DNA from: Chara braunii
Lineage: Eukaryota; Plantae; Charophyceae
Direction: 5' to 3'
Assembly (NCBI GenBank): GCA_003427395.1
Contig: BFEA01000025.1
Location: 3,448,728-3,512,727, forward strand
Length of the DNA stretch: 64,000 bases
Below the pieces are notes generated by a model. That model did no database searches. It had not been told where the DNA came from and worked only from the letters and a program-made list of their open reading frames with translations. The position numbers and the translations under genes are program-made. Shown here one piece after another: positions 1,390-62,800 of this stretch; positions within the stretch are counted from its first letter, which is position 1; each line of letters starts with the position of its first letter.

Positions 1390-2510
1390 GAACGCATCCC
1401 ATCAACGAACCTGCACATCTTGCCGCATTGCATCACCGAATCTGCACCGAACCTTCCACCGTCGAACCTACACCGCACCTACAGCCAACTTACAGCGAAT
1501 CTGTAGGGCTCAAGTGCATTTTTCCATCACCAAACCGACAGGGCTTTGAGCATTCCATCTCCGAACCTGCTGCAGGGCTCCGTGCATTCCATCACTGCAC
1601 CTGCAGGGGGATCAGTGCCCTCCACCAGCAAATCTCCACAGCTACCGTCTTCCCCCGAACATAACGCACCCAGAAAAGGAGAGTATACAAGATATGTTTT
1701 CGGCCAGATACAGTCAGAATGAGGGTGCGTTGTGTTCGGGGGAAGACGGGAGTAGGCACATTACATCAGCTAACCTGCAGGGCTCCGCGCCTCCCACCAC
1801 CAGACCTCAAGCTTAGGGCTTGGTGCCTCCCCCCACTAATTTAACCTCCAGGGATTTTGATCGTACATCCAATCACCGAACTTGCTGCAAAGGGCTCGGT
1901 GCAAATTCCATCATCGAACCTGCACCTGGTCCTGCTGCAGGGCTTTGTCCATTCTTTCATCACCAAACCTCAGCGCATTCCATCACCTAACCTGTTCGGA
2001 CAGGTACATCCCATCACCGCACCTGCCGGACCAGATGCATCCCATCACCCAACCTCCAGGGCTCGGTACAGTCCATCACCGAACCTGCAGCAGGGCTCAT
2101 CGCAGAGACTGTCCATCAACGAACCTGCAGGACCATCACCGCAATGAGCCCTGTCTGTCCATCACCGCACCTGCAGGACCAGGTGCATCCCACTACCAAA
2201 CCGCCAGGGCTCGCTCCATCCCATCACTAGACCTGCTGCAGGGCTAGGTCCATCCCATCACTACACCTGCTGCAGGGCTAGGTCCATCCCATCACCGAAC
2301 CTGCAGCAGGGCTCGGTCACATTTCATCACCTAACCAGCCTGCAGGGCTTGGTGCAGACCATCACCGGACCTGCAAAGCTCATTGCGAACCATAACAGGA
2401 CTTGGTGCAGACCATCACCTAACCAGCCTGAAGGGCTTGGTGCAGACCATTCCGAAGAGAGCCTGCATGCAGGACTGGGTGCGTTGCATCACAGGACCGA
2501 AGCTTCAGGC
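1390..2510. repeat. Degenerate tandem array, unit about 30 bp (CCATCACCGAACCTGCAGGGCTCGGTGCA)
   Basis: CCATCACC..ACCTGC..AGGGCT recurs dozens of times; interrupted by a family B MITE. Confidence 0.85.
1645..1749. mobile_element. MITE family B copy
   Basis: CCGTCTTCCCCCGAACATAACGCACCC...GGGTGCGTTGTGTTCGGGGGAAGACGG. Confidence 0.75.
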
Positions 2511-4697: not shown

Positions 4698-4960
4698 TTT
4701 TTTTTGTCTCTAATTATCAGCTAGAAAGTAAGCCTGCGTGCTGACAGTTCCCAAACCTTTTCTTCTTTTTTTTTTGGTTCCCCATCATTTTTATTATTGT
4801 TGGGTTTTTTTCCCAGCTCTCTTTTACTCACGCGCGCGGGACGTCGGGGCGGCAAAGCTAAGTCTACCAAATACATAGGTAAATTAGCATGGGTCTTGTG
4901 GTGCTCGATTTCCCCTTTTGCTGCCTTTTTTTTTGGGTCTTTTTTTTTTTTTTTTTTTTT

Positions 4961-5040
4961 AGACCATTTCTNGATTTNTGNGTGNCATCCTTGCGCAGGG
5001 GCCNTGGCAATCTTCTCTGTATCGTTCCANTTTTAACGGA
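4961..5040 (-). pseudogene. U6: U6 snRNA retro-pseudogene (lacks the 5' stem, poly(A)-tailed)
   Basis: Reverse complement reads TCCGTTAAAANTGGAACGATACAGAGAAGATTGCCANGGCCCCTGCGCAAGGATG...AGAAATGGTCT. The tail is the T run at 4940-4960. Tn-GGGTCT is repeated on both sides. Confidence 0.9.
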
Positions 5041-5834
5041 AGGNGTTTTTTTTTTTTTTTTTTTTTTGGGTCTTGTGGTGCTCGATTTCCCTTCTTTTCT
5101 GCCCTTTTTTTGTTCCCCATCATCTGTTAATACGGTGGTTTGCATCACGAAGAATGATTAGCATGGGTCTTGTGGTGCTCGATTTCCCTTTTTTTTTTCT
5201 TTTTTCTTTTTTTTGGTGAAATTTCGCACTTGCAGGGACCTGCCGGGAAGGCTTTCTTTTTTTTTTTTTTTTTTCCTAAAGTGACCCAGCCCCCGTCAGC
5301 GTAGAGCTGCTGGACCAATCAGGAGGGGAGGTTGTGAGTTCGAGGCTGGTGGCAGTGATTTCTCTTGGGCCTGAATCTCATGTGCGCATGGGCTCTTGCC
5401 TCAAGCGGCACTCGGAGCCACCGTTAGGCCCAGGGGAGGGGCCCGGCGCAGCCGGGGGGAGGGCCGGGTTGGGGGGGGGTGAGGGAGGTGAGGGAGGTAA
5501 CGTAGTGTCTTAAGCCGATTACAACGCCTGCTCATTATCGCTGTATCTAGACTGAGTGTTGCCCCAAATACAGCTGTAATGACAGGGCGTTCTATTCGGG
5601 AGAACACTGTATACGAGTGAGATAGGGGTGTCTTGGAGGAGCAGTGGTTGGGAGTGGAGGTTTATACCTGAGCTATAATGACCCGGTGTTCTATTCGCGT
5701 TCTGCGGGACCTTAGTGCCGCTCATAGACTTGCCCCACCCCCTTGGAGCTGCCATGAGAGAACATGTAAGGGGAAGAAGGGGGGAGTTGGGGGCAGGGGA
5801 ATCCTAGCGGCTGTTGCAGACACGAATCACGATA

Positions 5835-5869
<35 letters not shown>

Positions 5870-6683
5870 GAAAAGAAAGAGAGAGAAAATTTAAGGACGA
5901 AAGAAGAACTAGGAGCGGTTGTTGCAGCCAGGAATAACGATAACAGAAAGATGGAAAGACACAGAGTGCTGCTCGACGATGCAAAACGAATGATTGCAAA
6001 CCATGCTGGATGACGCAAAACGAAAGGCTGCCACATTTAAATTTTCAAATTTGAAAAAGAAGAATAGTGACAATAATGACAAACAGTGGCCAGACCTGCT
6101 TTTCTTTTTTTTTCTTTTTTTTTTTCTTTTTTTTTTTTTAACCAGACCTGCTTTCAGTACATGCTTCTCAAGCTTTCCATTCCCAATCCGCACGTACAAT
6201 TACTCAGCAACGCGTTGCACATTTTCCTCAATCCTCGACGCCGCGTTTCGACCGCTTGCGCTGCTGCCGTCATCACTCAGGAGACTTTCCACACTCCGCG
6301 CCTTACGGCTCCCACCATGCACGGTAGCACCGACTGAGTGTAGAGGGCGATCGAGGCCTTGCCCTCTATATGCGCAATGTACACCTTCGTCAGCAGAGAG
6401 AAGGAGCGACGGGTCTGGTCTGGCACCTACCGCCCACACGTGCAACAACCCCGTGCATCACTTGCACCTATCGTACTATTGTTGGTGCACGTGCATCAGT
6501 CCGCATCGGCATCAGTGCTTCCCGTTGCTCTGCCTCCGTTCTGCTCACCCACTCAAGCACTCTCCCTTGGGCAAGTGCTCACCACGCGCCCTCTCCTATT
6601 GAAAACCGTGCTGGACGACGCGAAACAAAAAGCTGCCTCGTTTTTTTTTTGTTTTTTTTTTTTTGTTTTTTTTTGTTGTTGTT

Positions 6684-6765
6684 AATGGTCCACGGATCAG
6701 ATATTAAACTGATCAGAACAGATACTACACTTGATCTTACTTAGCCAAAAGGCCGCGAAAGGTAT
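6684..6765 (-). pseudogene. U2: U2 snRNA 5' fragment (retro-pseudogene) with A-rich tail
   Basis: Reverse complement reads ATACCTTTCGCGGCCTTTTGGCTAAG(TAAG)ATCAAGTGTAGTATCTGTTCTGATCAGTTTAATATCTGAT. The branch-pairing GTAGTA is present. Tail at 6641-6683. Confidence 0.93.
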
Positions 6766-11108: not shown

Positions 11109-11128
11109 GTATCCTTCGGGACATCCGT

Positions 11129-11160
<32 letters not shown>

Positions 11161-11168
11161 GGCCCCTG
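11109..11168 (+). pseudogene. U6: U6 snRNA 5' fragment
   Basis: GTATCCTTCGGGACATCCGTTAAAATTGGAACGATACAGAGAAGATTAGCATGGCCCCTG, with an intact ACAGAGA box. Abuts a TIR element. Confidence 0.92.
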
Positions 11169-19127: not shown

Positions 19128-19191
19128 GTCCTTCGATACATCCGTTAAAATTGAAACGATGCAGAGAAGATTAGCATGGCCCCTACGCAAG
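19128..19191 (+). pseudogene. U6: U6 snRNA 5' fragment with A-tail
   Basis: GTCCTTCGATACATCCGTTAAAATTGAAACGATGCAGAGAAGATTAGCATGGCCCCTACGCAAG, followed by TTT and an A run. Confidence 0.9.
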
Positions 19192-19620
19192 TTTAAAAAA
19201 AAAAAAAAACTTGAATATACTTTTATGCAATGCTTGTGCTCGATCGTTTTTTTGGAGAAGATAAAATGGTGTTTGAAGGGGTGTAACGGATTTGGACTAG
19301 GCGTGAAAATTACAAGTCATCCTATTAGGACACTAAGAGCTCGGTGATCTCTCGATCTATAGTTTTGATACTAATCAATTTGAAATTGACCACAAAGTTG
19401 TCTTATCATGAACATTGTGGTACAATCATTGTGTTTAAGAGAAATAAAAAATAATTTTGAAAGACACTGAAATAGTTGACCTGATCATCTAATTTGTTCG
19501 AACAGAAATCAAAGCACAATGGTCGGACACTAAAAGTAAGATACAAAGTTTTAAGTAAAAAAAATACATACTTGAAACTGTGTATTATACTTTTAGTGTC
19601 CGACCATGTGGACATGTATC

Positions 19621-20149: not shown

Positions 20150-21250
20150 GAAGTATGGTTGGGGGGATCTAATAAGGGGTGCTTGGGTAAGGTGCAATGA
20201 CCAGGGGAGGACGGTACTGAAGAGGCCGTCAAGAAAAACTTTAAGCTTGTCTTCTGTTACTGGTTTTGACCTCAACCAGGGGTTACTCTCATATCTTCAT
20301 AATTATTACCAACCCATTTCCTCCTTCTCAACTAACATTAGTAGATTTACAATGACATTGCTTGGAGGGGGTTTAATTCGGTCTTATTCCAATTTCAAGG
20401 GGGGCAAGGGGAGCTAGTTTTCAATGTTTGATTAAGCGGTTCCTCCGGGGAAGAGACAAACACATAACCCAATCAACTCATGTACTCTCGGGATTATGTT
20501 CAAGGGACGCTGAACCTGATTTCCAACAGGTGCTACTCCGCACCAATAGATGGAGCAGTTGGTCATAAACCTACTAGGGATGGATGTTTTTACCCTTATC
20601 TCTAGTAGGGGCAGACCAAACTTAAACAAACAAACAAACAAACCACCCCCATACTTACGAAAACCAGAATAGACCGGGTTACAATGTAGAGCCACCTCGC
20701 CCCGGCTTCAACCAACATCGCTCTAATTTTAGCCCTCCGCCAACCACTTGAAATGCCCTCCAAACGCTGCTCCAGATCTTTTTTACTCACCTCACACCTT
20801 CATGGTTGGGTTACAGGGTTGAATCGCCTCACCCCGACTTCGCCAAGCACCTTGCATCGATCATTCGTGAGCCGGGTATGGCAACCTTCAGAAAGTCATT
20901 AATAGGTTGTCGGGTATCCTCTATTTTTACTGAAATACAAGAGAAGATCACCCCTTCCTCCCTTTATGCCCCCCTCGGCCCTGTACTGACCCCGCCCAGA
21001 AGCACGACCTATTTTTCATCAGCCCCAGACCAAACCTTTATCCCCCTTTCCCTCATGAGCATACACTTCCCTCCTAAGGCATGCCCCATCGATCCCTTAC
21101 CTTTATCTATATGCACTAGGGTTGATACAAACCTTGCATACCTCCCCTCCCCGCCTCAAAAGAGAGCAACTCCCTAAATTTGTCGCTACCCCTCCAGGGC
21201 GTTCACCTCCCTCCTTGCGAAGCATGTGCATGATAGTGCCCCCCCCCCTC
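20150..21250 (-). mobile_element. Very degraded LINE ORF2 fragment (EN-RT linker), interrupted by a 3'-hairpin element
   Basis: Remnants WRRAKIRA..ARWL and KPVTEDKLK...SPG resemble the region preceding the RT motif KSPGPDG. Weak, by eye only. Confidence 0.35.
20499..20643 (+). mobile_element. Family C element with a (CAAA)n tail
   Basis: GGGACGCTGAACCTGATTTCCAACAGGTGCTACTCCGCACCAATAGATGGAGC...AAACAAACAAACAAAC. Confidence 0.75.
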
Positions 21251-23970: not shown

Positions 23971-24645
23971 CGAGTAAATATTCATAGGCCTTGACCTATG
24001 CTAAACACGTGTGTGCACCGACTACAACAGTCGTGCGCAGGAAAACTGTTAATTCATACACGGTTTTTTTTTGTGAGTGTGCCGACCCATAACCTATTCT
24101 GCGTGAGACTTCAGGCATAGTTCGTGCACGAAAATGCTTAATAGGGACGTGCTTGAGAGATAAATCATAACATTTAGCTATGCTAACTCGCGCTGTCGAC
24201 TTTCATGCGCTGAGCATTCACGCCCTTCCCATCGTAGCACTCTGTCTAAGGGACAGAGGTGCTGCAAGGGTTGAACGACTCTTCCTTCAACCGTGTTATA
24301 TCGTGAAGGATACCCCTTTTATGATACGTCATTTCAAACACTTGAGTGTTATGCACAACGTGGAAGTCCGCAAAGGGTCGAACTATTGTGGGTAACGAGT
24401 GAAGCGTCATCACGACAGTCGACTTCCTGAATTCGCATAACTGAATGTTATGATTCCTCTCGCACGCACGTCCCTCTTAAGCATTTTCGTGCACGAATTA
24501 TGCCTGAAGTCTCCCGTAGAATAGGTTATAGGTCGACACACTCGCAAAAAGGACCGCATGCGAATTAATTATTTTTCTTCGCACGACTGTTGTAGTCGGC
24601 ATGTACACATGCTTAGCATGACCAAGGCCTATGAATATTTACACG
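23971..24645. mobile_element. Fold-back element with diverged inverted arms of about 210 bp
   Basis: 23971-24183 is the reverse complement of 24435-24645, e.g. TTCGTGCACGAAAATGCTTAA / TTAAGCATTTTCGTGCACGAA. Confidence 0.8.
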
Positions 24646-24837: not shown

Positions 24838-26173
24838 TCAAATTTTACATTCAGTACCAACGTCCGAGCAACTAATAGCAAAAACATAAGCACGCTCATT
24901 GTCGTCGGTACTGCACGAATTATGCTCACGCACGTTCACTTAAATGTAATGACTACGTGAAATAAAGTGGTTTAATCACTTAAAAAAAAATAAGTTGTAT
25001 GACATTTGGTGATCACTGTCATAAAAATATTGTAGTTTGTCCATCAACATTAAAGCAACACTCAGACAATCACAAAAACTTATTTCATTCTTCCATGCAT
25101 AACTGCGGTCACACAAAATTTGAGCAACAACATCGCACACACTAAGGGAGCCAACTTTACCGTTCTTTCCGACTCATACCTTGCCTTATGCACACAAAAC
25201 CCAACCATTTTCCACCATCCCACAACAAAACTAATCAGTTTTTAAACATGGTCATTAGGAAAAAAGTCTGGATAAAAATCACATAGGGGCTAAGGCCTTA
25301 GGTTGAGATGCAAAAGTATGTAAAGTTGTGTCGTAAACCGACCTGTTATCAATAGATAACAAAAGAGTGACACTTTGTAGCACCAGGTCGGACAAATTGG
25401 TTCTTCAAGCGAATGTGTAGACCTGCATCATTGTACAGGGAAAAAACATCAATGTTGAGTTTTAACACAAATGGAGAACATGCTCCATATTTTAACCTAA
25501 CGCCTTCACTAACTTATTTCTCACCTTCCTCTAATCTATACCTGAGATTGTTGAAAATTTTTGACAGCATCTCCCCCCTAGGGGGTGGATTGTCAATTTT
25601 TCTCTAGCAAAAAATCATCAAACTCTTTAAATTTCAGAAAAATTTAGCAACGCTTCTCGTAAGAAAAATGTTTTTCCATTTTTTTTCTGAACCTGAAAAA
25701 AACTATATATTTTTTTAATTTATAAAAATTTAAGTAGCGCTTCTTGTAAAAAAGACGTTTGTCAAGATTTATACAAAGTTGAAAATATGAAAGCAAAGTA
25801 CAATTATACTTGAAACTAACTTCTGATACTTACCTGATAGTTAGAACTAAGGACAGTCTACACGAACCTTCTTTGAATATGGTATAATGAGTTAACTCTA
25901 GTTTTAAACCCTCAGTAAGATCGGTTTTATCTTATACCAAACTTCCCTCTCATCATTTAATTTACTTTGCCTACGACTCCAACACTCTGCGAGCTTCTAA
26001 GTGACTAAGCTATCGAGAAAGACGCCACAAGAGATAACCCATAAAAAAAATAAAATAAAAATAAAAATAAAAAAAATCTCTCACCAAACCCTCAAGTTGT
26101 TTATCAAACACATAGTTCATTTGTCTTTCGGTTAGATTAAACCCGTATATCCCTTTCTTACATATGACATAGA

Positions 26174-27232
26174 GTTAAACCGCCCCATCCTAGGGGTACG
26201 TTCAACCTGCCTTAATCATAATAAGGTATACAATTAAACTGCTTCATCTTAGAGGTACGTCGAACCCATTTAAACGATGTACATAAAGTGTACGACTAAG
26301 TCGCCCTATCCTATGGGTATTCTTAGTCAGTTTGAACAATTGAGATAAGACTGATAACTAGACCGCCCCATCCTAGGGGTACGTCGAGTATTTGTCTAGA
26401 AACGACGTAAGGCATATAAGCAGGTCACCCCATCATAGGGGTACGCATAGCCGCCTAAACAATCACTTGTGGCATAAGACTAAGCCGCCCCATCCTAGGG
26501 GTACGTTTAGCCTGCCTAGTCAGCAACTTTATGACGTGTGACTGAATCGCCCCGTCCTAAGGGTACGTCCATACTATGCAATAACAACAATATTTAACAT
26601 GTAAAATATACTAGTTCCTTCTCTTTGTTAGCAGACGATCAGACCGCCTTATCCTAGGGGTACGCCCAACCCTGCCTTGACCATATGTAAACTAAAAAAT
26701 AATCAATGTTATACTAACTCTCTGTCTTTTCATGTTATTATGGGCATTGGACTGAACCACCCCATCCTAAGGGTATTTCGAGTCTTTCCGGATTACCATA
26801 AATATTATACTACGAATTTTTCATTTTCTGCTTTGTGTTCTATTTGGCTTATTGATTAGACCTCCCCATCTAAGGGGTACGTCTAACCTGCCAGCATAAT
26901 GAATTTAAATTATATACAGTATAAAATTTTATACTCTTGTTTCGGTTAGGTTCACGACTCATGATTAGGCCGCCCTATCCTAGGGTTACGCCTAGTCATT
27001 GCCATTTTCTCCCTCATAAGGAAAGCGACCTAGATTACCCAAAACCAAAGAAAACAAGGATTTTAGGTTTGCCAACCTAAGATCTCATCCTCCATTATTA
27101 AACCCTCAAAAGAAACATGTGATCGGACCTTCCAACCTAGGGTAGCCCCAACCTCTGAAGACCAAGCAAACAACCCATCATACAAAAAATAAACATACCG
27201 TCGAACCGCCCCATCCTAGGGGTACGTCCAAC
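26174..27232. repeat. CRISPR-like array of 12-13 hairpin repeats (consensus CCGCCCCATCCTAGGGGTACG) with dissimilar spacers
   Basis: Repeat starts at 26180, 26239, 26301, 26363, 26425, 26485, 26547, 26644, 26757, 26861, 26970, (27128, degenerate) and 27206. The first six periods are 59-62 nt. No cas genes in the window. Confidence 0.9.
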
Positions 27233-28420
27233 CTTTAGTTTACGTGGTCAAACGCAAGCAAAAACCATCTTTTTATCTCTTTTTCCACCCTTTCCCCATT
27301 CATTCTCTCTGCCTTCAAACAAACATATGGTTTTTCACGCATAATCCTTTTACCTTAATTAATATTAAAATCCTGGAAACAACTTAACTGAAAATAAATA
27401 AAAATAAAATAGCAATTTTGTCATTCGTTATGTAAAGTAGAAGGTAGTACAACTATGGGAATACGAGACCCCTTTCGAAAAGGAGGTTATAACTGAATGT
27501 TCTCTGCCTCCAGAACCCCACTTGAGCTCTGGCAGAGCTCCCGCAATAGGTGGAGGAACCCCCCCCAAGACCTTGTTGCGGTCTTGCGGGTTGCAATCCC
27601 ACCTGCCACCTTCCTCTCTCGAAGAATAGACTAGAGTGATATTGAAAAAGACAGAGAAAAAAACTTTAGTCTCTCGAGACACAAGGGAAGATTCAACTCA
27701 TACTCGCGGGGAGGGAGCCTTGTTACCTTCAACTCTTGAGGGTCCCGCAATGGTGGCTAATTGCAACGAAACACCTCTAATAACAACACCAATGCTGACC
27801 ATTGCGGTCAACCCAAACTGACAGTAACCTACCGATAGTGATAGCCCAAGGTTACGACAAAATCTTCATTCAACGTCAATCGTTAGCCTTGTAACAACAA
27901 CTTCTTTAAAACATCATTGAGATGAAGGAAGCTACAACGCCCGCTGAAGACTGTACCAACCTCGACCAAGGAACTCAACAACAATGCGTCAGTGTACAAA
28001 AGTAGATGCACTAAAATGTGCAAATATAGTGGCAACAATCTTAATGAAGAGCATCCCCAAACGAGAGCAACGACCTTCCTATCGACCAACAACAATCTAA
28101 CTGTAACAGTCGCAATGACAACAATCTACTGAGAAAATCACCAGTAGTACCAATAACTCAAAACACAACGTTTCACCAACACCAAATAGTATACAATGCC
28201 ATTAATCCTATGACAAAATCACCAGGTCGGGGATGCCACATCAATCTCAAACTTCCAACAATATAGCAACTTCCAACTTTCATCAGCAGTGCTCTGAGTA
28301 CAACAGCCCGCCAAACCGAGGAAACAACTGTTACATTGTTTCCGCCATGAGGACAATAGTGTAACCTTTCGGCTTGAAGTTCATTTACCCAACTTGAAAT
28401 TGCAACAGTAACAAGTTCAA

Positions 28421-28979
28421 GTTGTTGTGAGAGTCGAATCGTTGCTAGTGGCTTTAGGATACTATTGCTGACTTAAGGAGGAAGGACTTTAATTTTATTG
28501 ATACAAATGTTGTGTTTTCAGACAATGCTACTGTGACATTCAAAGCTCTGGTCGACGATAATAAAACAGTTGCAAAATGAGTATCAACACTCGTCCCTTA
28601 TAGGTATCAAACTTAAGAATCCACAATAGAAGTCTGTTGCTGGCAAAAACACATCCCGAACATGTCGGAGCAACCGATGGCGCAACAGTTCCACCTCCAA
28701 GTACTGTAACAACACTTAAAGTATACTCACACTAGGCGCTCATAATCGCAGAATCGCAAAACCAGTAGGTAGATCAAGTCCTTCTGAAAGAAGCCGTCGA
28801 TCTAGTTGTTGATTTTGCGATTCTGCGATTTTAACGGCCTTGTGTGAGTATGCCCTTAAAAATTCACAGTAGCGCTATCTGAAAACACAACATTTGTACC
28901 AATAAAATGATAGTCCTTCCTCATTAAGTCAGCAACAGTATCATGAAGCCACTAGCAACGATTCGACTCTCACAACGAC
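28421..28979. mobile_element. Fold-back element (arms about 115 bp) containing a nested MITE
   Basis: 28421-28535 is inverted at 28864-28979. Confidence 0.8.
28719..28855. mobile_element. Tourist/Harbinger-like MITE with TTA TSD
   Basis: TTA|AAGTATACTCACAC...GTGTGAGTATGCCC|TTA, with an internal ATCGCAGAATCGCAAAA inverted repeat. Confidence 0.7.
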
Positions 28980-29227
28980 CTAATGGTGAGTAGCAACTAC
29001 TGCCGAGACACACCCACTAGCATAGCAATGAGAAGCAGTGACGGATTCCAAACCAGTAGTAGCAACTGCTTGGAACCAATAACGACTGTAGCAGACTGAG
29101 AACTTTAACAAAAGTAGTGATCATGAAACCATCAATTGTTGTAGCAACCCCACAAAAACAGTAGTAGATTGTTGTTGTTGAAGACAATGACAATAGTCTT
29201 TAATCATGCACATAACAACACTTTGCA

Positions 29228-31580
29228 TTTTTTTTTTTTTAGACGCCCTCTTCAGTGTTAGTGGTGCTGATAAAGAAGACACCACTACCACCTGGGGAGC
29301 GACTCCATCTATTGGTGGGGAGCATCACCTACCGGAAAACGGGTTCAGCGTCTCATATACAAACTGAATTCAGAGCATATCAGAACAAAGATTGTGGAGG
29401 ATTCCTGCAGCATTGATTACTCTGGAATCCAGACGATTGACTGGGCAAAATATTGGGGAGAGGGGCGAACCTGTTCACCCTGGAACCGGCGTTAGTTGCC
29501 TGCTGTTACATGCTAGTTCCTCCATCTCCCCGCCATTGATTCCTATGAAATCCAAAGAACCTGCCATTGATTCCTATGAAATCCAGAGAATTATTTGAGC
29601 AAAATACATCATCCTTTTTTTTTAAGAGTGTAAATTATTGGAATAACTCTTGGTGGGGACCACAAACGGTTAACGGGTAGCTGAAAATTCACGAATGAAA
29701 ATTTTGAAGTGAGAGTTTTTGGCAGTATGAAAATCCCGAATGTTCCTGAAGTGGTGAAAGGTCCGAAGACCCTGAAAACCACCTGTTAAGACAGGCTGCA
29801 TCCTGAAGTGGTGAAGTGAGAGTTTTGAGCAGTCTGAAAATCCTGAATGGTCCTGAAGTGGTGAAAGGTCCGAAGACCCGGAAAACCACCTGTTTAGGCA
29901 GGCTGCATTTTGAAGTGGTGAAGGGTGCCCTGAAGTGGTGAAAGGTCCGAAGACCCTGAAACTACTTGTTCAGGCAGGCTGCATCCTGAAGTGGTGAAGG
30001 GTGTCTTGAAGTGGTGATGAAAAATACGACTGTTGTTAACCATCTCTCGTGGGGACCTATTGCTAAGCTACTCAAATAACAATTACCACAAAGGTCCTTC
30101 GAATGCTCAGAACCAATGGACTCCCTGACAAAACACTCTAACATTCACTAACACTGTCTAATTCTGTGTCGAACTCTTCAAGGCGTAGCACCTCCTCACC
30201 CTGAGCCTGACCCCAGATACATTATTGCACACTAGTTCCTTCCCCCCCCTGGTCCCATTTCTTGACTGAGAGTCTAAGCCACCCCCCTTTTCCACTGTTG
30301 ACCAAACCATTGTCTCTCTACTATGGTTGTGGCTACCAACGGGAACATGTATGAGAAATCCTCGGGGTTTTTCATTGGGGTGCTTGGGTCAACTTGCAGC
30401 CAATCGTGAAATCTGAGTTTGTAGTCCTTCACAAAGTCGCTGCCTCCCACCTTATCTCCTTTTTCCTAGGCCAATCTATCAGAGTCATCCTGCCCCCCTT
30501 TTCCCCTCCCAGCCATTTTATGCAGAAGGTGTGAATTTCGTTGATGATGTCTGATTTTTGTGTGAGAATTACCATTTTATCATGAATTCGTTGTCATTGT
30601 GCTCTTATTTTTGTAGTCGCCACTTTCTCTTCCTTCATTCTGGACCCTTTTTGGTCAAAAATGCACCTCCTTGTCCACAAGGTCCACATCATCGTCTTTC
30701 TAGATATGGTAAAGAGGTTACTGGCGACGCCGGATGCGTTTGACCTGCTTCATGGTCGCAGCAGAAGAGCTTCCAATTTCCATGGCCACTCCTCATTCGT
30801 GCCCAATTGAGACCAAATGCGATCCCACCAACGCAACAACAGGGTAGCATCCGGACATTGGAGAAAAATGTGTTCAATTGTCTCACATATTTTTCGGGCC
30901 GGGAACCCTGCATTACAACACTTACACCACGGGAGTGTGATCCCCCTTTGCTCCAGATCCGTCCTGTCTATAATCCAATTATTGGTGGGGAGGCATCTGT
31001 GGCAGATTTGCCACTGTAGGGAGGCAAACTTTGCTGGTTTCTCTTTCACCCCTCTGCAACTTTCTAACTTGATCCCTATGCAGGCTAATGTGTTTCTACC
31101 ATCGTTCTTCTATCCCTGCCCAAATGTCGACCCGGGGTTTGATCATCCTATAAGTGGCTTTTACAGACAACTCAGAGAGGTGCATGGCTTGTCCATTCCG
31201 TCCCCTAACCCATTGCCATTCTAGAGGTCCAGGGCTAAAGCGGACAGGGGGACTTCTGGTAGAAATGCCCGCAATTGAGTCCTCCCTTCCTTATGGCTCT
31301 GTAGGACCCGGATCCGGTAGAGGTTGGTCCTCTCATGCCATTGGATCGAGTTTGGATGGTAGCGAACTACGGTATCATCCCCTCTTCTTTTGAAAAGGTT
31401 GACCATGACCCCTTCCGCTCTGGCCTCAACTACCGTGCCAATTTGCAGGGGGAAGTTTACTACCCTTATTGCTACCCAGTCCTGCTCTTGTAGCATCGGA
31501 CCCTTTCTTAAGGTCACCACCCAGACAAGGGGCATCGAAAATGTCAACTAGTCCAGGGCGTTTGCCAGCCTGTCGTGAGT
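29228..31580 (-). mobile_element. 5'-truncated, degraded LINE copy interrupted by a tandem repeat
   Basis: Poly(T) at 29228 and a 3' UTR similar to 37693-38030. ORFs 30750-31049 (WQICHRCLPTNNW, ETIEHIFLQCP) and 31221-31547. Confidence 0.85.
29700..30025. repeat. Tandem repeat (unit about 107 bp, CTGAAGTGGTGAA sub-repeats) inside a LINE 3' region
   Basis: TCCTGAAGTGGTGAAAGGTCCGAAGACCCTGAAAACCACCTG occurs three times with variation. Confidence 0.85.
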
Positions 31581-59883: not shown

Positions 59884-62800
59884 ATGGACGAACTTAGTAC
59901 ACTGTATTGTAGGAACGCCGCATGGAAAAAATGCGTCGACTCAGCCGACCTAGACCTGCGTTCCATAAATGTCAATGGCTTGGCTTCGTGTTGACCAGAA
60001 AAGTGTCAGGCCATCTGGGACCAATTGCGAGGAATAGGAGGCAGACGCTGGCCGGACGTGATCTGCATACAAGAAACCCATCTACAAAATTGCCCGGACC
60101 ATAACCGGGCCCATAAGTTAGTATGGCCCTATACGACCATTAGGGCCCATGCGCCAAGATCAGGATCTGTAGGGGTGGCAATTTGGATCCCCCCGGATTC
60201 GAGGTTCGATCCTGTTCACTGGGTTGTAGATGAAGTGGAAGGGCGCTGGGCTTCGTTGCTGGGGACGTTAGAACTCGAACGCCTCTGCATCCTTCGCATC
60301 TACTCACCTAACTCTGTTAGGGAAAGGAGGGAATTCTTGGGGACGATTGGTACACAAGTCCCGGAAGGTATCCCGCTAATAATAGCCGGAGACTTCAATG
60401 CAACCCCAGACAAGGGCCTGGACAGATGGAACCCCCAAGAGTCACCCTCCTTCGCAGCACTAGAAGATGAGCAAATGATAGCAGACCTCTGTGAGACTCT
60501 TTCAGTCTTTGACACATTCTGTCGCCTGCACCCCCAAGTACGGGCCTTCACGTGCATTCGGGACGGCAACCCGGCCCGCCTATCTAAATCTCGGATCGAT
60601 CTTATCTTATTGTCCAAGGATCTGGAGGGAGCCCTGCGATGGGCAATGATCCTCCCGCGCAGCCCACACCCGGGCCTTGACCACAAAACATGTGGGATAA
60701 TACTAACAATGAAAAAAAGGCCGGATCAAGGACCAGGCTTCTATAAACTAAACACCTCCCTGTTGAAGGACTTGTCATTCCCACAAATGATCAGACACGA
60801 ATGGGAATTCTAGCGTCAACAAAAGCACCTCTTTGGGTCCTATCTCGAGTGGTTCAACAACGGCCTTGTGTTCTTGGCCAAAAAGTGCAAGGATTTCTCC
60901 AAAGCCAAAGCGGCCCTGCGACAACAGCTTGAAATGACCACCCACAATGAACTAATAACCCTGGAAGAGCAGGCAAAGACACAACACACAGCACAGGAAT
61001 CACTGCAGCTCATGACCTCTATCTCCAATGCCAAAGACCGCCTCCTGCAATATGCACAACACAGATGGCAAGGAATCCGAATCAGAGGGAAAATGGCCAA
61101 ACTCACTCACGAGGCTTCCATGGACACTCAATTTTTCTCCATGGCCACCGCAAGGGCACGACGAACAGTTATCGAAGCACTCTTCGACCCACATGATAAT
61201 ACCATCATTGCTACTGACACGGCCCACTGCACATTAATCACCAGGACGTTCTTCAAACATCTATACACGTCCAAAATCCCATCCCCCCATGGGGAAGAAA
61301 GGATCCGGAAAATTCGGGACTTCCTGCTCCCGATGGACCGAGGTATCTCTTCCCAACAGCGAGACGGACTAGAGACAGAGCTATCCAAAGAGGAGATATG
61401 GACTGCACTCCTCCAAAGGAGGGAGGAAAAGACCCCTGGTATTGACGGCTTCCCTAAAGAATTTTGGGAAGCCATGTAGACGGATCTCAATGCCGACCTT
61501 TGGGAGTATTATCAGAATGTCTGGGAGGCCGGGGAAATAGGGAATACGGTAGGGAAAGGAGTGTTATCCCTCCTATATAAAAAATGCGATAAAATGAATA
61601 TCAGAAACTACAGACCTATCACACTGCCCACAGTGGTATATAAAATGTTGTCTAAGGCACTGGCCAACCGTATGGCGACAGTATTGGAGGAGGTGATTCA
61701 CCCAACCCAAACGGGGTTCATATCCGGCATGAATATTCAGGAAAATATCCTGCTGGTCAATGACGTGGTTCAATTGGCGCGCCGCAAACAGGCGAATGCG
61801 GCCATTATATTTATAGACTTTGAAAAAGCATATGACCACGTGGATTGGGAATTCCTAAACATGTGCTTAGAGAAAATGAACTTTGGACCTGTCTTGCGAC
61901 GCTGGGTCAAGATCCTCCACACAAATGCCGCAACCTGTGTTCAGGTCAATGGGTCAGTGACACCTCCATTTGAACTCCAACGGTTAGTGAGGCAGGGGGA
62001 CCCCATTGCCCCCTATCTCTTCTTGGTAATTATGGAAGCCTTATCAGCGAACCTGCGACAGAACAAAGACCTTACACGCATCAAGATAGCGAATATCCCG
62101 GAAGAGGCAGTGCCTATCTGCTCTTTGTTCGCCGACGATCTAACTATCATGGTTGAAGCAACCGAGGCTAACATGGCAGAAATCCAGCACCTTATGAACA
62201 AATTCTGCCGCCTGTCGGACATGACTGTAAATTGGGGCCAAAAGACTATGGGATGGTGGATGCATCACCAAGGGGGTAGACCTCCTGAAAGCCCGCGAAT
62301 TACATGGTTCCCCCCCGAGGACCCCCTGCGAATTCTAGGGGCACTAATCACTGCTAAAGGAAGGCCAACAACGAACGATGAGTGGCTGACTGGACCTGCA
62401 TAGGGTAAATTTGGGAAATGGAACAATAAGAATACATCCATCTTTGGGCGGGCACTTGTCATTAATAATGTAATCTTGGCCACATTGTGGTATAAAGCCA
62501 TTCTGTGGTCAATGAGTAATGGAGGTCTCAAGACCTTAAAACAACAGCTGGCGGCCTTCCTCTGGAGAGGGGATAGCAACATCACCCACGCCATCAGCCG
62601 AGTAGCGTGGGACTCGGTGATCCAGCCCAAGCACAAAGGCGGTCTTGGAATTGTGGATCCGGCCACACAATTCCGGGCCCTTTCGATTCGCTGGCTTCAG
62701 CTCATTATCTTCTCACCATCCTCCCCATGGGTCCCCCTTGCCCTGACACAAATCTCTGATCTTGCTCCGGAATCTCCACCTGAGATTGACCCCTGCGTAT

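What the first reader, a model, noticed from the sequence alone, without database searches (positions are those of the whole stretch)
26174..27232. CRISPR-like array of structured hairpin repeats with dissimilar spacers in a eukaryotic genome
Seen: 12-13 copies of a 21-nt repeat, CCGCCCCATCCTAGGGGTACG (stem CCCC/GGGG, loop ATCCTA). The first seven copies have periods of 59, 62, 62, 62, 60 and 62 nt with mutually dissimilar 38-41 nt spacers; spacing then shifts to 97-113 nt. The core is conserved while the spacers are not, unlike every other tandem repeat in this window. The flanks form an outer stem whose sequence changes but whose pairing is kept: GACTAAG/CTTAGTC (26294/26322), GATTAGAC/GTCTAACC, ATGATTAGGC/GCCTAGTCAT, GTTAAAC/GTTCAAC. 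Several substitutions give G-U pairs on the + strand, weakly favouring + as the folded strand. Inference: a selected multivalent RNA or ssDNA element, such as a protein-binding or packaging array of a retroelement or virus, or a precursor cut into ~60-nt RNAs. No cas or nuclease gene is visible, so I do not call it CRISPR.
Basis: partly seen in the sequence, partly recalled or inferred. Interest (0 to 1): 0.85.

Follow-up and report, generated by a model that had tools for sequence, protein, structure and literature searches.

The report
Diverged tandem repeat with conserved hairpin
A 1.1-kb non-coding stretch of a eukaryotic (reportedly stonewort alga) genome holds 13 same-strand copies of a small hairpin whose top is kept while the rest of each repeat has decayed; this looks like a row of docking sites once under selection, but this copy is silent, low-copy and not CRISPR-like.

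Summary
The array is real. There are 13 same-strand units at 26173-27233, and 9 match the 21-nt core within 3 mismatches where 0 are expected by chance.

1. The spacers are not dissimilar. The 62-nt units align end to end, so this is an old tandem repeat, not a repeat-spacer array.
2. G-U wobble favours the minus strand: 23 cells against 9. RNAalifold finds the two-tier hairpin only on the minus strand, where the loop reads UAGGAU.

Decay is very uneven. The JC distance is 0.27 in the core, 0.71 in the stem arms and 1.42 in the flanks. The unpaired loop and internal-loop bases are among the best kept.

Covariation of the outer stem is only suggestive, because one pair alone is individually significant.

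DNA contigs show a few related arrays with other spacers elsewhere in the genome. Poly(A) RNA-seq shows almost no reads over the array. There is no Rfam hit, no cas or other gene, and no LTR or terminal inverted repeats around it.

Best reading (about 0.45): a silent, decaying copy of a non-coding module that carried a multi-site protein-docking hairpin platform on a single strand.

Rivals are a neutral palindromic minisatellite and a dsDNA binding-site array.

Unchecked notes of this scan report many other hairpin arrays on other DNA of this genome.

The parts
26173..26207 (.). hairpin unit h1 (core 26180-26200, exact consensus)
   Evidence: 63 bits
26232..26266 (.). unit h2, degraded core CTGCTTCATCTTAGAGGTACG
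26294..26328 (.). unit h3, perfect 7-bp outer stem GACTAAG/CTTAGTC
26356..26390 (.). unit h4 (exact core)
26418..26452 (.). unit h5
26478..26512 (.). unit h6 (exact core)
26540..26574 (.). unit h7, the last unit that follows at the ~62-nt spacing
26637..26671 (.). unit h8, first of the long-spaced units
26750..26784 (.). unit h9
26854..26888 (.). unit h10; fully paired 8-bp outer stem on the minus strand
26963..26997 (.). unit h11, outer stem GATTAGGC/GCCTAGTC
27121..27153 (.). unit h12, most decayed (indel in the loop)
   Evidence: 39.5 bits
27199..27233 (.). unit h13 (exact core)
26083..26172 (.). leader before h1; resembles the long-type spacers (TTTGTCTTTCGGTTAG motif)
   Evidence: weak alignment
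27234..27439 (.). non-array tail that shares the few-fold raised DNA depth of the array, so it probably belongs to the same low-copy module
   Evidence: table 2 (58.7 against about 12 for single copy)
26036..26082 (+). A-rich simple repeat at the left edge (boundary marker; may be the tail of an upstream retrocopy)
27384..27416 (+). second A-rich simple repeat, at the right edge

Best explanation
The locus is a silent, decaying copy of a low-copy non-coding module, probably part of a mobile element. It carries a row of 13 small two-tier hairpins that arose by tandem duplication of a ~62-nt unit.

Each hairpin has four parts:
- a variable 7-8-bp basal stem;
- a conserved asymmetric internal loop (CG / UAC on +, which reads GUA / CG on -);
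- a conserved 4-bp G-C apical stem;
- a conserved 6-nt loop (AUCCUA on +, UAGGAU on -).

While the module's lineage was active, the hairpin tops were held constant and the rest of each unit drifted. That is the pattern expected if many copies of one sequence-specific protein dock on the folded single strand. The strand is most likely RNA and slightly more likely the minus strand. Possible roles are packaging, export or stabilisation.

Shown: the array, the homology of the spacers, the uneven conservation, the pairing statistics, related copies in the genome, and the lack of poly(A) RNA.

Inferred: selection, RNA as the folded molecule, the strand, a protein partner, and membership of a mobile element.
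For: - 13 units, all on one strand, and none elsewhere in the window.
- Pairwise identity is 77% in the core, 54% in the arms and 36% in the flanks. The JC distances are 0.27, 0.71 and 1.42. The column permutation p is below 5e-5.
- Unpaired positions are among the most conserved. C30, A33, T38 and A39 are 100% identical pairwise, and A28 and T29 are 85%.
- Outer-stem pairing drops sharply when the partner columns are slid: 75.6% falls to 51% or 43% on +, and 84.6% falls to 51% or 55% on -.
- No shuffle reaches the observed percentage paired or covariation score, 0 of 500 on either strand.
- RNAalifold recovers both tiers on its own on the minus strand: -8.0 kcal/mol, with 5 pairs showing double changes.
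- DNA contigs of the same organism hold core-spacer-core pieces with other spacers. Summed depth is 4-13 times the single-copy level, and the non-array tail is also raised (tables 2 and 5c).
- Unchecked notes of this scan report many hairpin arrays with a constant loop (UAGGUU, UAAGUU) in repeats of this genome. The minus-strand loop here, UAGGAU, resembles them. This is a lead only.
Against: - Covariation is weak. A unit's own arms pair only about 5 points better than shuffled arms, and only one of eight outer pairs is individually significant.
- Tandem units are related, which inflates the shuffle tests.
- The strand indicators disagree. Wobble counts, RNAalifold and consensus-structure energy favour - (-9.3 against -6.4 kcal/mol, Wilcoxon p = 0.08). 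The MFE z-score of the 441-nt stretch favours + (-3.9 against -1.3).
- Almost no reads lie over the array in two oligo-dT RNA runs, of which only 6-12% was read, and there is no RNA contig.
- No LTR, terminal inverted repeat, target-site duplication or transposon gene adjoins the array, so 'mobile element' rests on copy number alone.
- No partner protein is known.
Confidence: 0.45

Rival explanations
1. A neutral palindromic minisatellite. A 62-nt unit with a GC-rich imperfect palindrome expanded by slippage or unequal exchange. The core stays similar because short-tract gene conversion keeps homogenising the stretch that is already most alike, not because it does anything.
For: - Whole units are homologous.
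- Four cores are identical over 21-26 nt, with similarity extending to 37-42 nt. This fits recent conversion or duplication.
- Covariation is weak.
- No transcription was seen.
- Other palindromic tandem repeats occur in the window, for example the 34-nt unit at 1976-2465.
Against: - A five-fold difference in divergence within a 62-nt unit is hard to obtain without constraint.
- The boundaries of conservation follow the hairpin's anatomy: loop, internal loop and apical stem.
- Pairing falls sharply when partner columns are slid.
Confidence: 0.27
2. An array of binding sites read as double-stranded DNA. It would be a dozen copies of a ~21-bp site for one sequence-specific DNA-binding protein, acting as an enhancer, insulator or transposase-binding array, like the 12 Su(Hw) sites of the Drosophila gypsy element.
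For: - A conserved, asymmetric 21-nt core sits between AT-rich variable spacers, all in one orientation.
- Conservation of 'unpaired' bases fits direct sequence readout equally well.
- No RNA was seen.
Against: - This model does not explain the complementary flanking arms, whose sequence varies between units (TA against CG at 16-46, AT against GC at 18-44, 19-43 and 20-42).
- It does not explain the excess of wobble-compatible mismatches on one strand, 23 against 9.
Confidence: 0.17
3. A cluster of small-RNA precursors (snoRNA-, miRNA- or siRNA-like) cut into phased ~60-nt products.
For: The regular ~62-nt period of seven units, each with a hairpin.
Against: - No Rfam family matches, even at E up to 10.
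- The hairpins are about 35 nt, too short for plant-type miRNA precursors.
- I saw no C/D or H/ACA box pattern shared by the units by eye; no formal box scan was run.
- The period breaks to 97-158 nt.
Confidence: 0.05
4. A CRISPR or CRISPR-like adaptive array.
For: Only the superficial layout: a partly palindromic repeat recurring at about 60 nt.
Against: - The spacers are homologous to each other.
- The repeats are only about 80% alike and the spacing is irregular.
- The context is eukaryotic, with U2 and U6 snRNA copies and a LINE.
- There is no ORF of 90 aa or more within 3.5 kb on either side (none between 21177 and 30750), and no Pfam family matched the neighbouring ORFs tested.
- The core is absent from viral, metagenome and prokaryote collections.
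Confidence: 0.01

Closest known systems
Clustered iron-responsive elements (five IREs in the transferrin-receptor 3' UTR); from my own knowledge
   Same: Several small hairpins lie on one strand. Each has a conserved 6-nt loop, a short conserved upper stem, conserved unpaired base(s) between the tiers, and a lower stem free to vary as long as it pairs.
   Different: The sequence is unrelated. IREs sit in an expressed host mRNA with a known partner (IRP). Here there is no transcript and no partner, there are 13 units, and they arose by tandem duplication.
Xist A-repeat and similar tandem modules of long non-coding RNAs; from my own knowledge
   Same: 7-9 or more copies of a GC-rich ~25-nt core that forms a short hairpin, separated by AT/U-rich spacers of variable length that evolve faster. 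It acts as a multivalent protein platform.
   Different: Xist is a mammalian, expressed RNA with a known binder (SPEN). It has no covarying basal stem around each core.
Gypsy insulator: 12 Su(Hw) sites in the 5' untranslated region of a Drosophila LTR retrotransposon; from my own knowledge
   Same: About a dozen same-orientation conserved short cores with AT-rich spacers, in non-coding DNA of a mobile element.
   Different: It works as duplex DNA and has no complementary arms. That the present array lies in a mobile element is itself unproven.
Tandem repeats inside non-coding parts of plant LTR retrotransposons (PMC7004042; PMC3648361; both seen only as titles and abstracts, not read)
   Same: Tandem arrays with short monomers borne by repeats, which can be amplified or decay.
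   Different: The abstracts treat those arrays as sources of satellite DNA. Neither mentions a conserved hairpin core with variable stems.
Hairpin arrays noted by this scan in repeats or LTRs of the same genome (s1-543685, s1-529347, s1-535427, s1-565560; AI notes, unchecked)
   Same: Rows of 7-25 same-strand hairpins with a constant loop and changing stems. Their loops UAGGUU and UAAGUU resemble the minus-strand loop UAGGAU found here.
   Different: Those are mostly reported in very abundant repeats or giant LTRs. This one is low-copy, has a different core and shows no LTR context. I could not read their sequences.
CRISPR arrays
   Same: A partly palindromic direct repeat at roughly 60-nt intervals.
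   Different: The spacers are homologous, the repeats have diverged, the spacing is irregular, the genome is eukaryotic, and there are no cas genes.

Membership tests
CRISPR array | Near-identical direct repeats at a regular spacing | tested here: not met
   The seven short-unit cores are 80% identical pairwise. Spacing ranges from 59 to 158 nt.
CRISPR array | Spacers unrelated to one another | tested here: not met
   The units align over all 62 columns. The left 13 nt are 53% identical against a null of 25%, with 0 of 5000 random sets as high.
CRISPR array | Adjacent cas genes in a prokaryotic or viral genome | tested here: not met
   No ORF of 90 aa or more lies between 21177 and 30750. The neighbouring ORFs tested have no Pfam hit. 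U2 and U6 snRNA copies and a LINE mark a eukaryote.
Tandem repeat (minisatellite) | Head-to-tail units that are homologous over their whole length | tested here: met
   Alignment A1 has 73% mean column identity. Family D1 has 53-nt in-register copies at 60-81%. TRF does not report it, even at a minimum score of 30, because the units are too diverged.
Tandem repeat (minisatellite) | Uniform neutral decay along the unit | tested here: not met
   JC distance is 0.27 in the core, 0.71 in the arms and 1.42 in the flanks. The permutation p is below 5e-5.
Structured RNA element (array of protein-binding hairpins) | Base pairs kept through compensatory change | tested here: inconclusive
   4-5 outer-stem pairs show double changes, and the shuffle controls give 0-1 of 500. 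Only pair 16-46 is individually significant, and the units are related.
Structured RNA element (array of protein-binding hairpins) | The locus is transcribed | tested here: not met
   Depth is 0-0.7 over the array in two oligo-dT runs, only partly read, and there is no RNA contig. Total and small-RNA libraries were not tested.
Structured RNA element (array of protein-binding hairpins) | One strand folds better than the other | tested here: inconclusive
   The minus strand is favoured by G-U count (23 against 9), by RNAalifold and by energy (p = 0.08). The plus strand is favoured by MFE z-score.
LTR-borne hairpin arrays of this genome (the scan's own class) | Seven or more same-strand hairpins with a constant loop | tested here: met
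   13 units; loop columns are 83-100% identical apart from column 31 at 50%.
LTR-borne hairpin arrays of this genome (the scan's own class) | Lies inside an LTR or an abundant mobile repeat | tested here: inconclusive
   No long direct repeat pair, terminal inverted repeat or transposon gene lies around it. DNA depth is only 4-13 times single copy. Other genomic copies could not be fetched.
Known RNA families (snoRNA, miRNA and others) | A match to a curated covariance model | tested here: not met
   Rfam gives nothing in the array at gathering score. At E up to 10 the only overlapping row is a chance-level cyano-S1 match, 22.6 bits against a gathering score of 39.9.
Helitron terminus arrays | A hairpin followed about 10 nt later by a conserved CTRR end, with a 5' TC start | tested here: not met
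   Only one of 13 units (h6) has CTAG|TC after the hairpin. The others read CTTAA, CCTAA, CTTGA or CCAGC.

The most novel reading that the evidence does not exclude
The array would be one family of a genome-wide, undescribed system in this alga. In that system, non-coding modules of mobile elements carry rows of RNA hairpins whose constant loop (here UAGGAU on the minus strand; UAGGUU or UAAGUU in other families noted by the scan) serves as a family-specific address read by a cognate protein for packaging or export. This would be a natural counterpart of engineered MS2/PP7 hairpin arrays.
Probability: 0.3. Interest if true: 0.7.

Novelty: new variant of a known kind. Interest (0 to 1): 0.42.

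Why it matters
If the hairpin tops were indeed kept by selection, the locus is a fossil of a natural multi-site docking platform on a single-stranded nucleic acid. Together with the other arrays noted in this genome, it would point to an unstudied way in which algal mobile elements mark their own RNA. On its own, this copy is silent, low-copy and has no known partner, so its value is as one more, differently coded, example. It also corrects the reading: this is a diverged tandem repeat, not a repeat-spacer system.

Tried and rejected
- **CRISPR-like reading:** rejected because the spacers are homologous.
- **Rfam:** the whole window at gathering score, and 25500-28000 at E up to 10, gave nothing relevant.
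- **tRNA scan:** none found.
- **Exact core in public collections:** 0 hits each in the metagenome, viral and prokaryote-genome collections, so no related loci could be fetched.
- **Covariance model R1 over the window with filters off:** no further copies.
- **Search for LTR pairs, terminal inverted repeats or a second array in the window:** none.
- **Pfam on 20 ORFs:** the only hits are the APE and RT domains of a LINE 33 kb away.
- **Helitron-end idea:** the CTRR end is not conserved.
- **Second hairpin in the spacers (note s1-549854):** two or three of six short spacers fold better than shuffles (z -4.5, -2.3, -1.6), the others do not, and the hairpins are not in register. Inconclusive.
- **Literature:** no paper in the library describes hairpin arrays in Chara repeats.
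- **Notes search for the motif itself:** nothing.
- **Protein search with the 49-aa ORF across two cores:** considered as a route to other copies and left out as too unlikely to justify the cost.
- **Organism name:** Chara braunii comes from the scan's notes. The runs are coded, and I did not verify the name.

Full report
**1. What is there**

Between 26173 and 27233 the + strand carries 13 copies of a ~35-nt imperfect palindrome built around the core CCGCCCCATCCTAGGGGTACG.
- Nine copies match the core with at most 3 mismatches, where none are expected in shuffles.
- A looser scan and a covariance model run with filters off raise the count to 13. Unit h12 is the most decayed.
- Neither search finds a copy anywhere else in the 64-kb window or on the other strand.
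- Start-to-start distances are 59, 62, 62, 62, 60, 62, then 97, 113, 104, 109, 158 and 78 nt.
- Tandem Repeats Finder does not report the array, because the units are too diverged.

**2. The spacers are homologous**

- The seven short units align over all 62 columns with 73% mean column identity.
- In a gapless comparison, the 13 nt to the left of the stem are 53% identical pairwise. Random genomic 13-mers give 25 ± 3%, and 0 of 5000 sets reach the observed value.
- The 13 nt to the right are 32% identical, p about 0.014.
- The long spacers share weaker similarity with each other and with the leader before h1.

The locus is therefore an old tandem duplication of a ~62-nt unit, with a longer variant of about 100-110 nt. 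It is not a repeat with foreign spacers.

**3. Decay is far from uniform**

| Region (13 units) | Pairwise identity | Jukes-Cantor distance |
|---|---|---|
| 21-nt core | 77% | 0.27 |
| Outer stem arms | 54% | 0.71 |
| Remaining flanks | 36% | 1.42 |

- No permutation of the columns gives a 21-column block as conserved as the core (p < 5e-5).
- The best-kept positions include unpaired ones. In the loop, A28 and T29 are 85% identical pairwise and C30 and A33 are 100%. The internal-loop bases T38 and A39 are 100%.
- A structure kept only for pairing would not hold its loops constant. This pattern is typical of sequence-specific recognition.

**4. Pairing and covariation**

The proposed fold has an outer helix of 8 pairs, an asymmetric internal loop, an inner helix of 4 G-C pairs and a 6-nt loop.

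| Measure | + strand | - strand |
|---|---|---|
| All cells paired | 75.6% | 84.6% |
| Outer helix paired | 68% | 85% |
| Paired after sliding partners by one column | 51% / 43% | 51% / 55% |
| Shuffles reaching the observed % paired and covariation score | 0 of 500 | 0 of 500 |

- The margin over shuffled arms is only about 5 points. Most of the pairing comes from a shared consensus palindrome.
- Only pair 16-46 (TA ×6, CG ×4) is individually significant, with Fisher p = 0.015.
- The units are related by descent, which inflates these tests.
- I rate covariation as suggestive, not established.

**5. Which strand folds**

- Mismatch cells are G-U on + in 9 cases and A-C on + (that is, G-U on -) in 23 cases.
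- RNAalifold finds only the inner stem on + (-3.7 kcal/mol). On - it finds both tiers (-8.0 kcal/mol).
- The consensus structure averages -6.4 kcal/mol on + and -9.3 on - (Wilcoxon p = 0.08).
- Against this, the 441-nt stretch has an MFE z-score of -3.9 on + and -1.3 on -.

The strand is unresolved and leans to minus, where the loop reads UAGGAU.

**6. Context**

- The window is eukaryotic. It holds U2- and U6-like copies and a LINE with APE and RT domains at 60-62.4 kb.
- Around the array there is no ORF of 90 aa or more between 21177 and 30750.
- The neighbouring ORFs tested have no Pfam family.
- There is no long direct repeat pair and no terminal inverted repeat.
- A-rich simple repeats lie at 26036-26082 and 27384-27416.
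- A very abundant, A-tailed short repeat abuts the right side at 27440-27618.

**7. Other copies and expression**

Contigs and reads of four runs of the same organism were laid at 85% likeness or more.
- Summed DNA word depth is about 12 in the clearly single-copy stretch 27834-28424.
- It is 45-159 over the array and 59 over the 200-nt tail after it.
- Several DNA contigs join one core to another through 14-38 letters that are not in this window. To my eye these letters resemble the spacer consensus; I did not align them.
- So a few related arrays with other spacers exist. The depth is not a copy number.
- In two oligo-dT RNA runs, of which 6% and 12% were read, depth over the array is 0-0.7. 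A putative RNA contig set has nothing there.
- The neighbouring abundant repeats are well covered in the same runs.
- This copy therefore looks silent in poly(A) RNA.

**8. What it is not**

- No Rfam family matches and there is no tRNA.
- The core has no exact match in the viral, metagenome or prokaryote collections.
- The Helitron-end pattern is not kept.
- The 'second hairpin' in the spacers is seen in only two or three of six units and is not in register.

**9. Interpretation**

The most economical account of an old tandem repeat with these features is past purifying selection on a folded, sequence-specifically recognised element:
- the hairpin top, including its unpaired bases, is five times less diverged than the flanks;
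- the arms are still mostly complementary;
- related copies carry different spacers.

In other words, it reads as a multi-site docking platform on a single strand. It was probably RNA of a non-coding mobile module, and this copy is now silent. I give this reading about 0.45.

A neutral palindromic minisatellite kept alike by short-tract conversion gets about 0.27. A duplex-DNA binding-site array of the gypsy-insulator type gets about 0.17. A small-RNA precursor cluster gets about 0.05. The evidence does not exclude any of these three rivals.

**10. Earlier notes**

The scan's earlier notes are AI-written and unchecked.
- They name the genome as Chara braunii.
- They describe many hairpin arrays with constant loops (UAGGUU, UAAGUU and others) on other DNA of this genome, mostly in abundant repeats or giant LTRs.
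- I could not read those sequences.
- The likeness of UAGGAU to those loops is a lead that fits the minus-strand reading. It is not evidence.
- The motif of this array is named in no other note.
- No paper in the library describes such arrays.

**11. Verdict**

This is a new variant of a known kind: tandem structured modules and repeat-borne arrays. Its interest as a single locus is moderate.

Noticed in passing
window 27440-27618 (+): A very abundant short repeat, with DNA word depth about 39,000 against about 12 for single copy. Other copies end at 27618 and continue into A-rich tails, so it looks like a SINE-like or LINE 3'-end retrocopy. RNA reads cover it in both directions. It may be the motif of note s1-577488.
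   Followed up: partly
window 29213-29400, with an inverted partial copy at 20497-20555: A hyper-abundant repeat (DNA word depth about 255,000) that is strongly represented in all three RNA runs. Many reads break at 29303 and 29352, so a ~50-nt core is shared by many different contexts.
   Followed up: no
window 1522-2465: Tandem repeats with a 34-nt unit (also 68 and 104 nt). The unit holds a near-perfect palindrome around CTGCAG (CTAGACCTGC-T-GCAGGGCTAG). This is a second palindromic tandem repeat in the window.
   Followed up: no
window 25569-25590: An isolated palindrome, ATCTCCCCCCTAGGGGGTGGAT, 600 nt upstream of the array. It shares CCTAGGGG with the core and may be chance.
   Followed up: no
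window 23971-24645 and 28421-28979: Two foldback structures, with arms of 140 nt (85% complementary) and 125 nt (88% complementary). They have raised DNA depth and look like MITE or foldback elements.
   Followed up: no
window 4953-5041 (-), 11109-11168 (+), 19128-19224 (+), 6661-6765 (-): Three U6-like copies and one U2-like copy pass Rfam gathering scores. The U2 and one U6 copy are shortened, in line with the retro-copy note s1-549855.
   Followed up: partly
window 60025-62403 (+): ORFs with an endonuclease/exonuclease/phosphatase domain (E 1e-11) and a reverse transcriptase domain (E 1e-32). This is a LINE split over several frames.
   Followed up: partly
window 25913-26035: One 158-nt contig of a putative RNA run matches perfectly at low depth (2.2) and stops at the A-rich tract. 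It may be a transcript or retrocopy tail just upstream of the array, or DNA carry-over.
   Followed up: no
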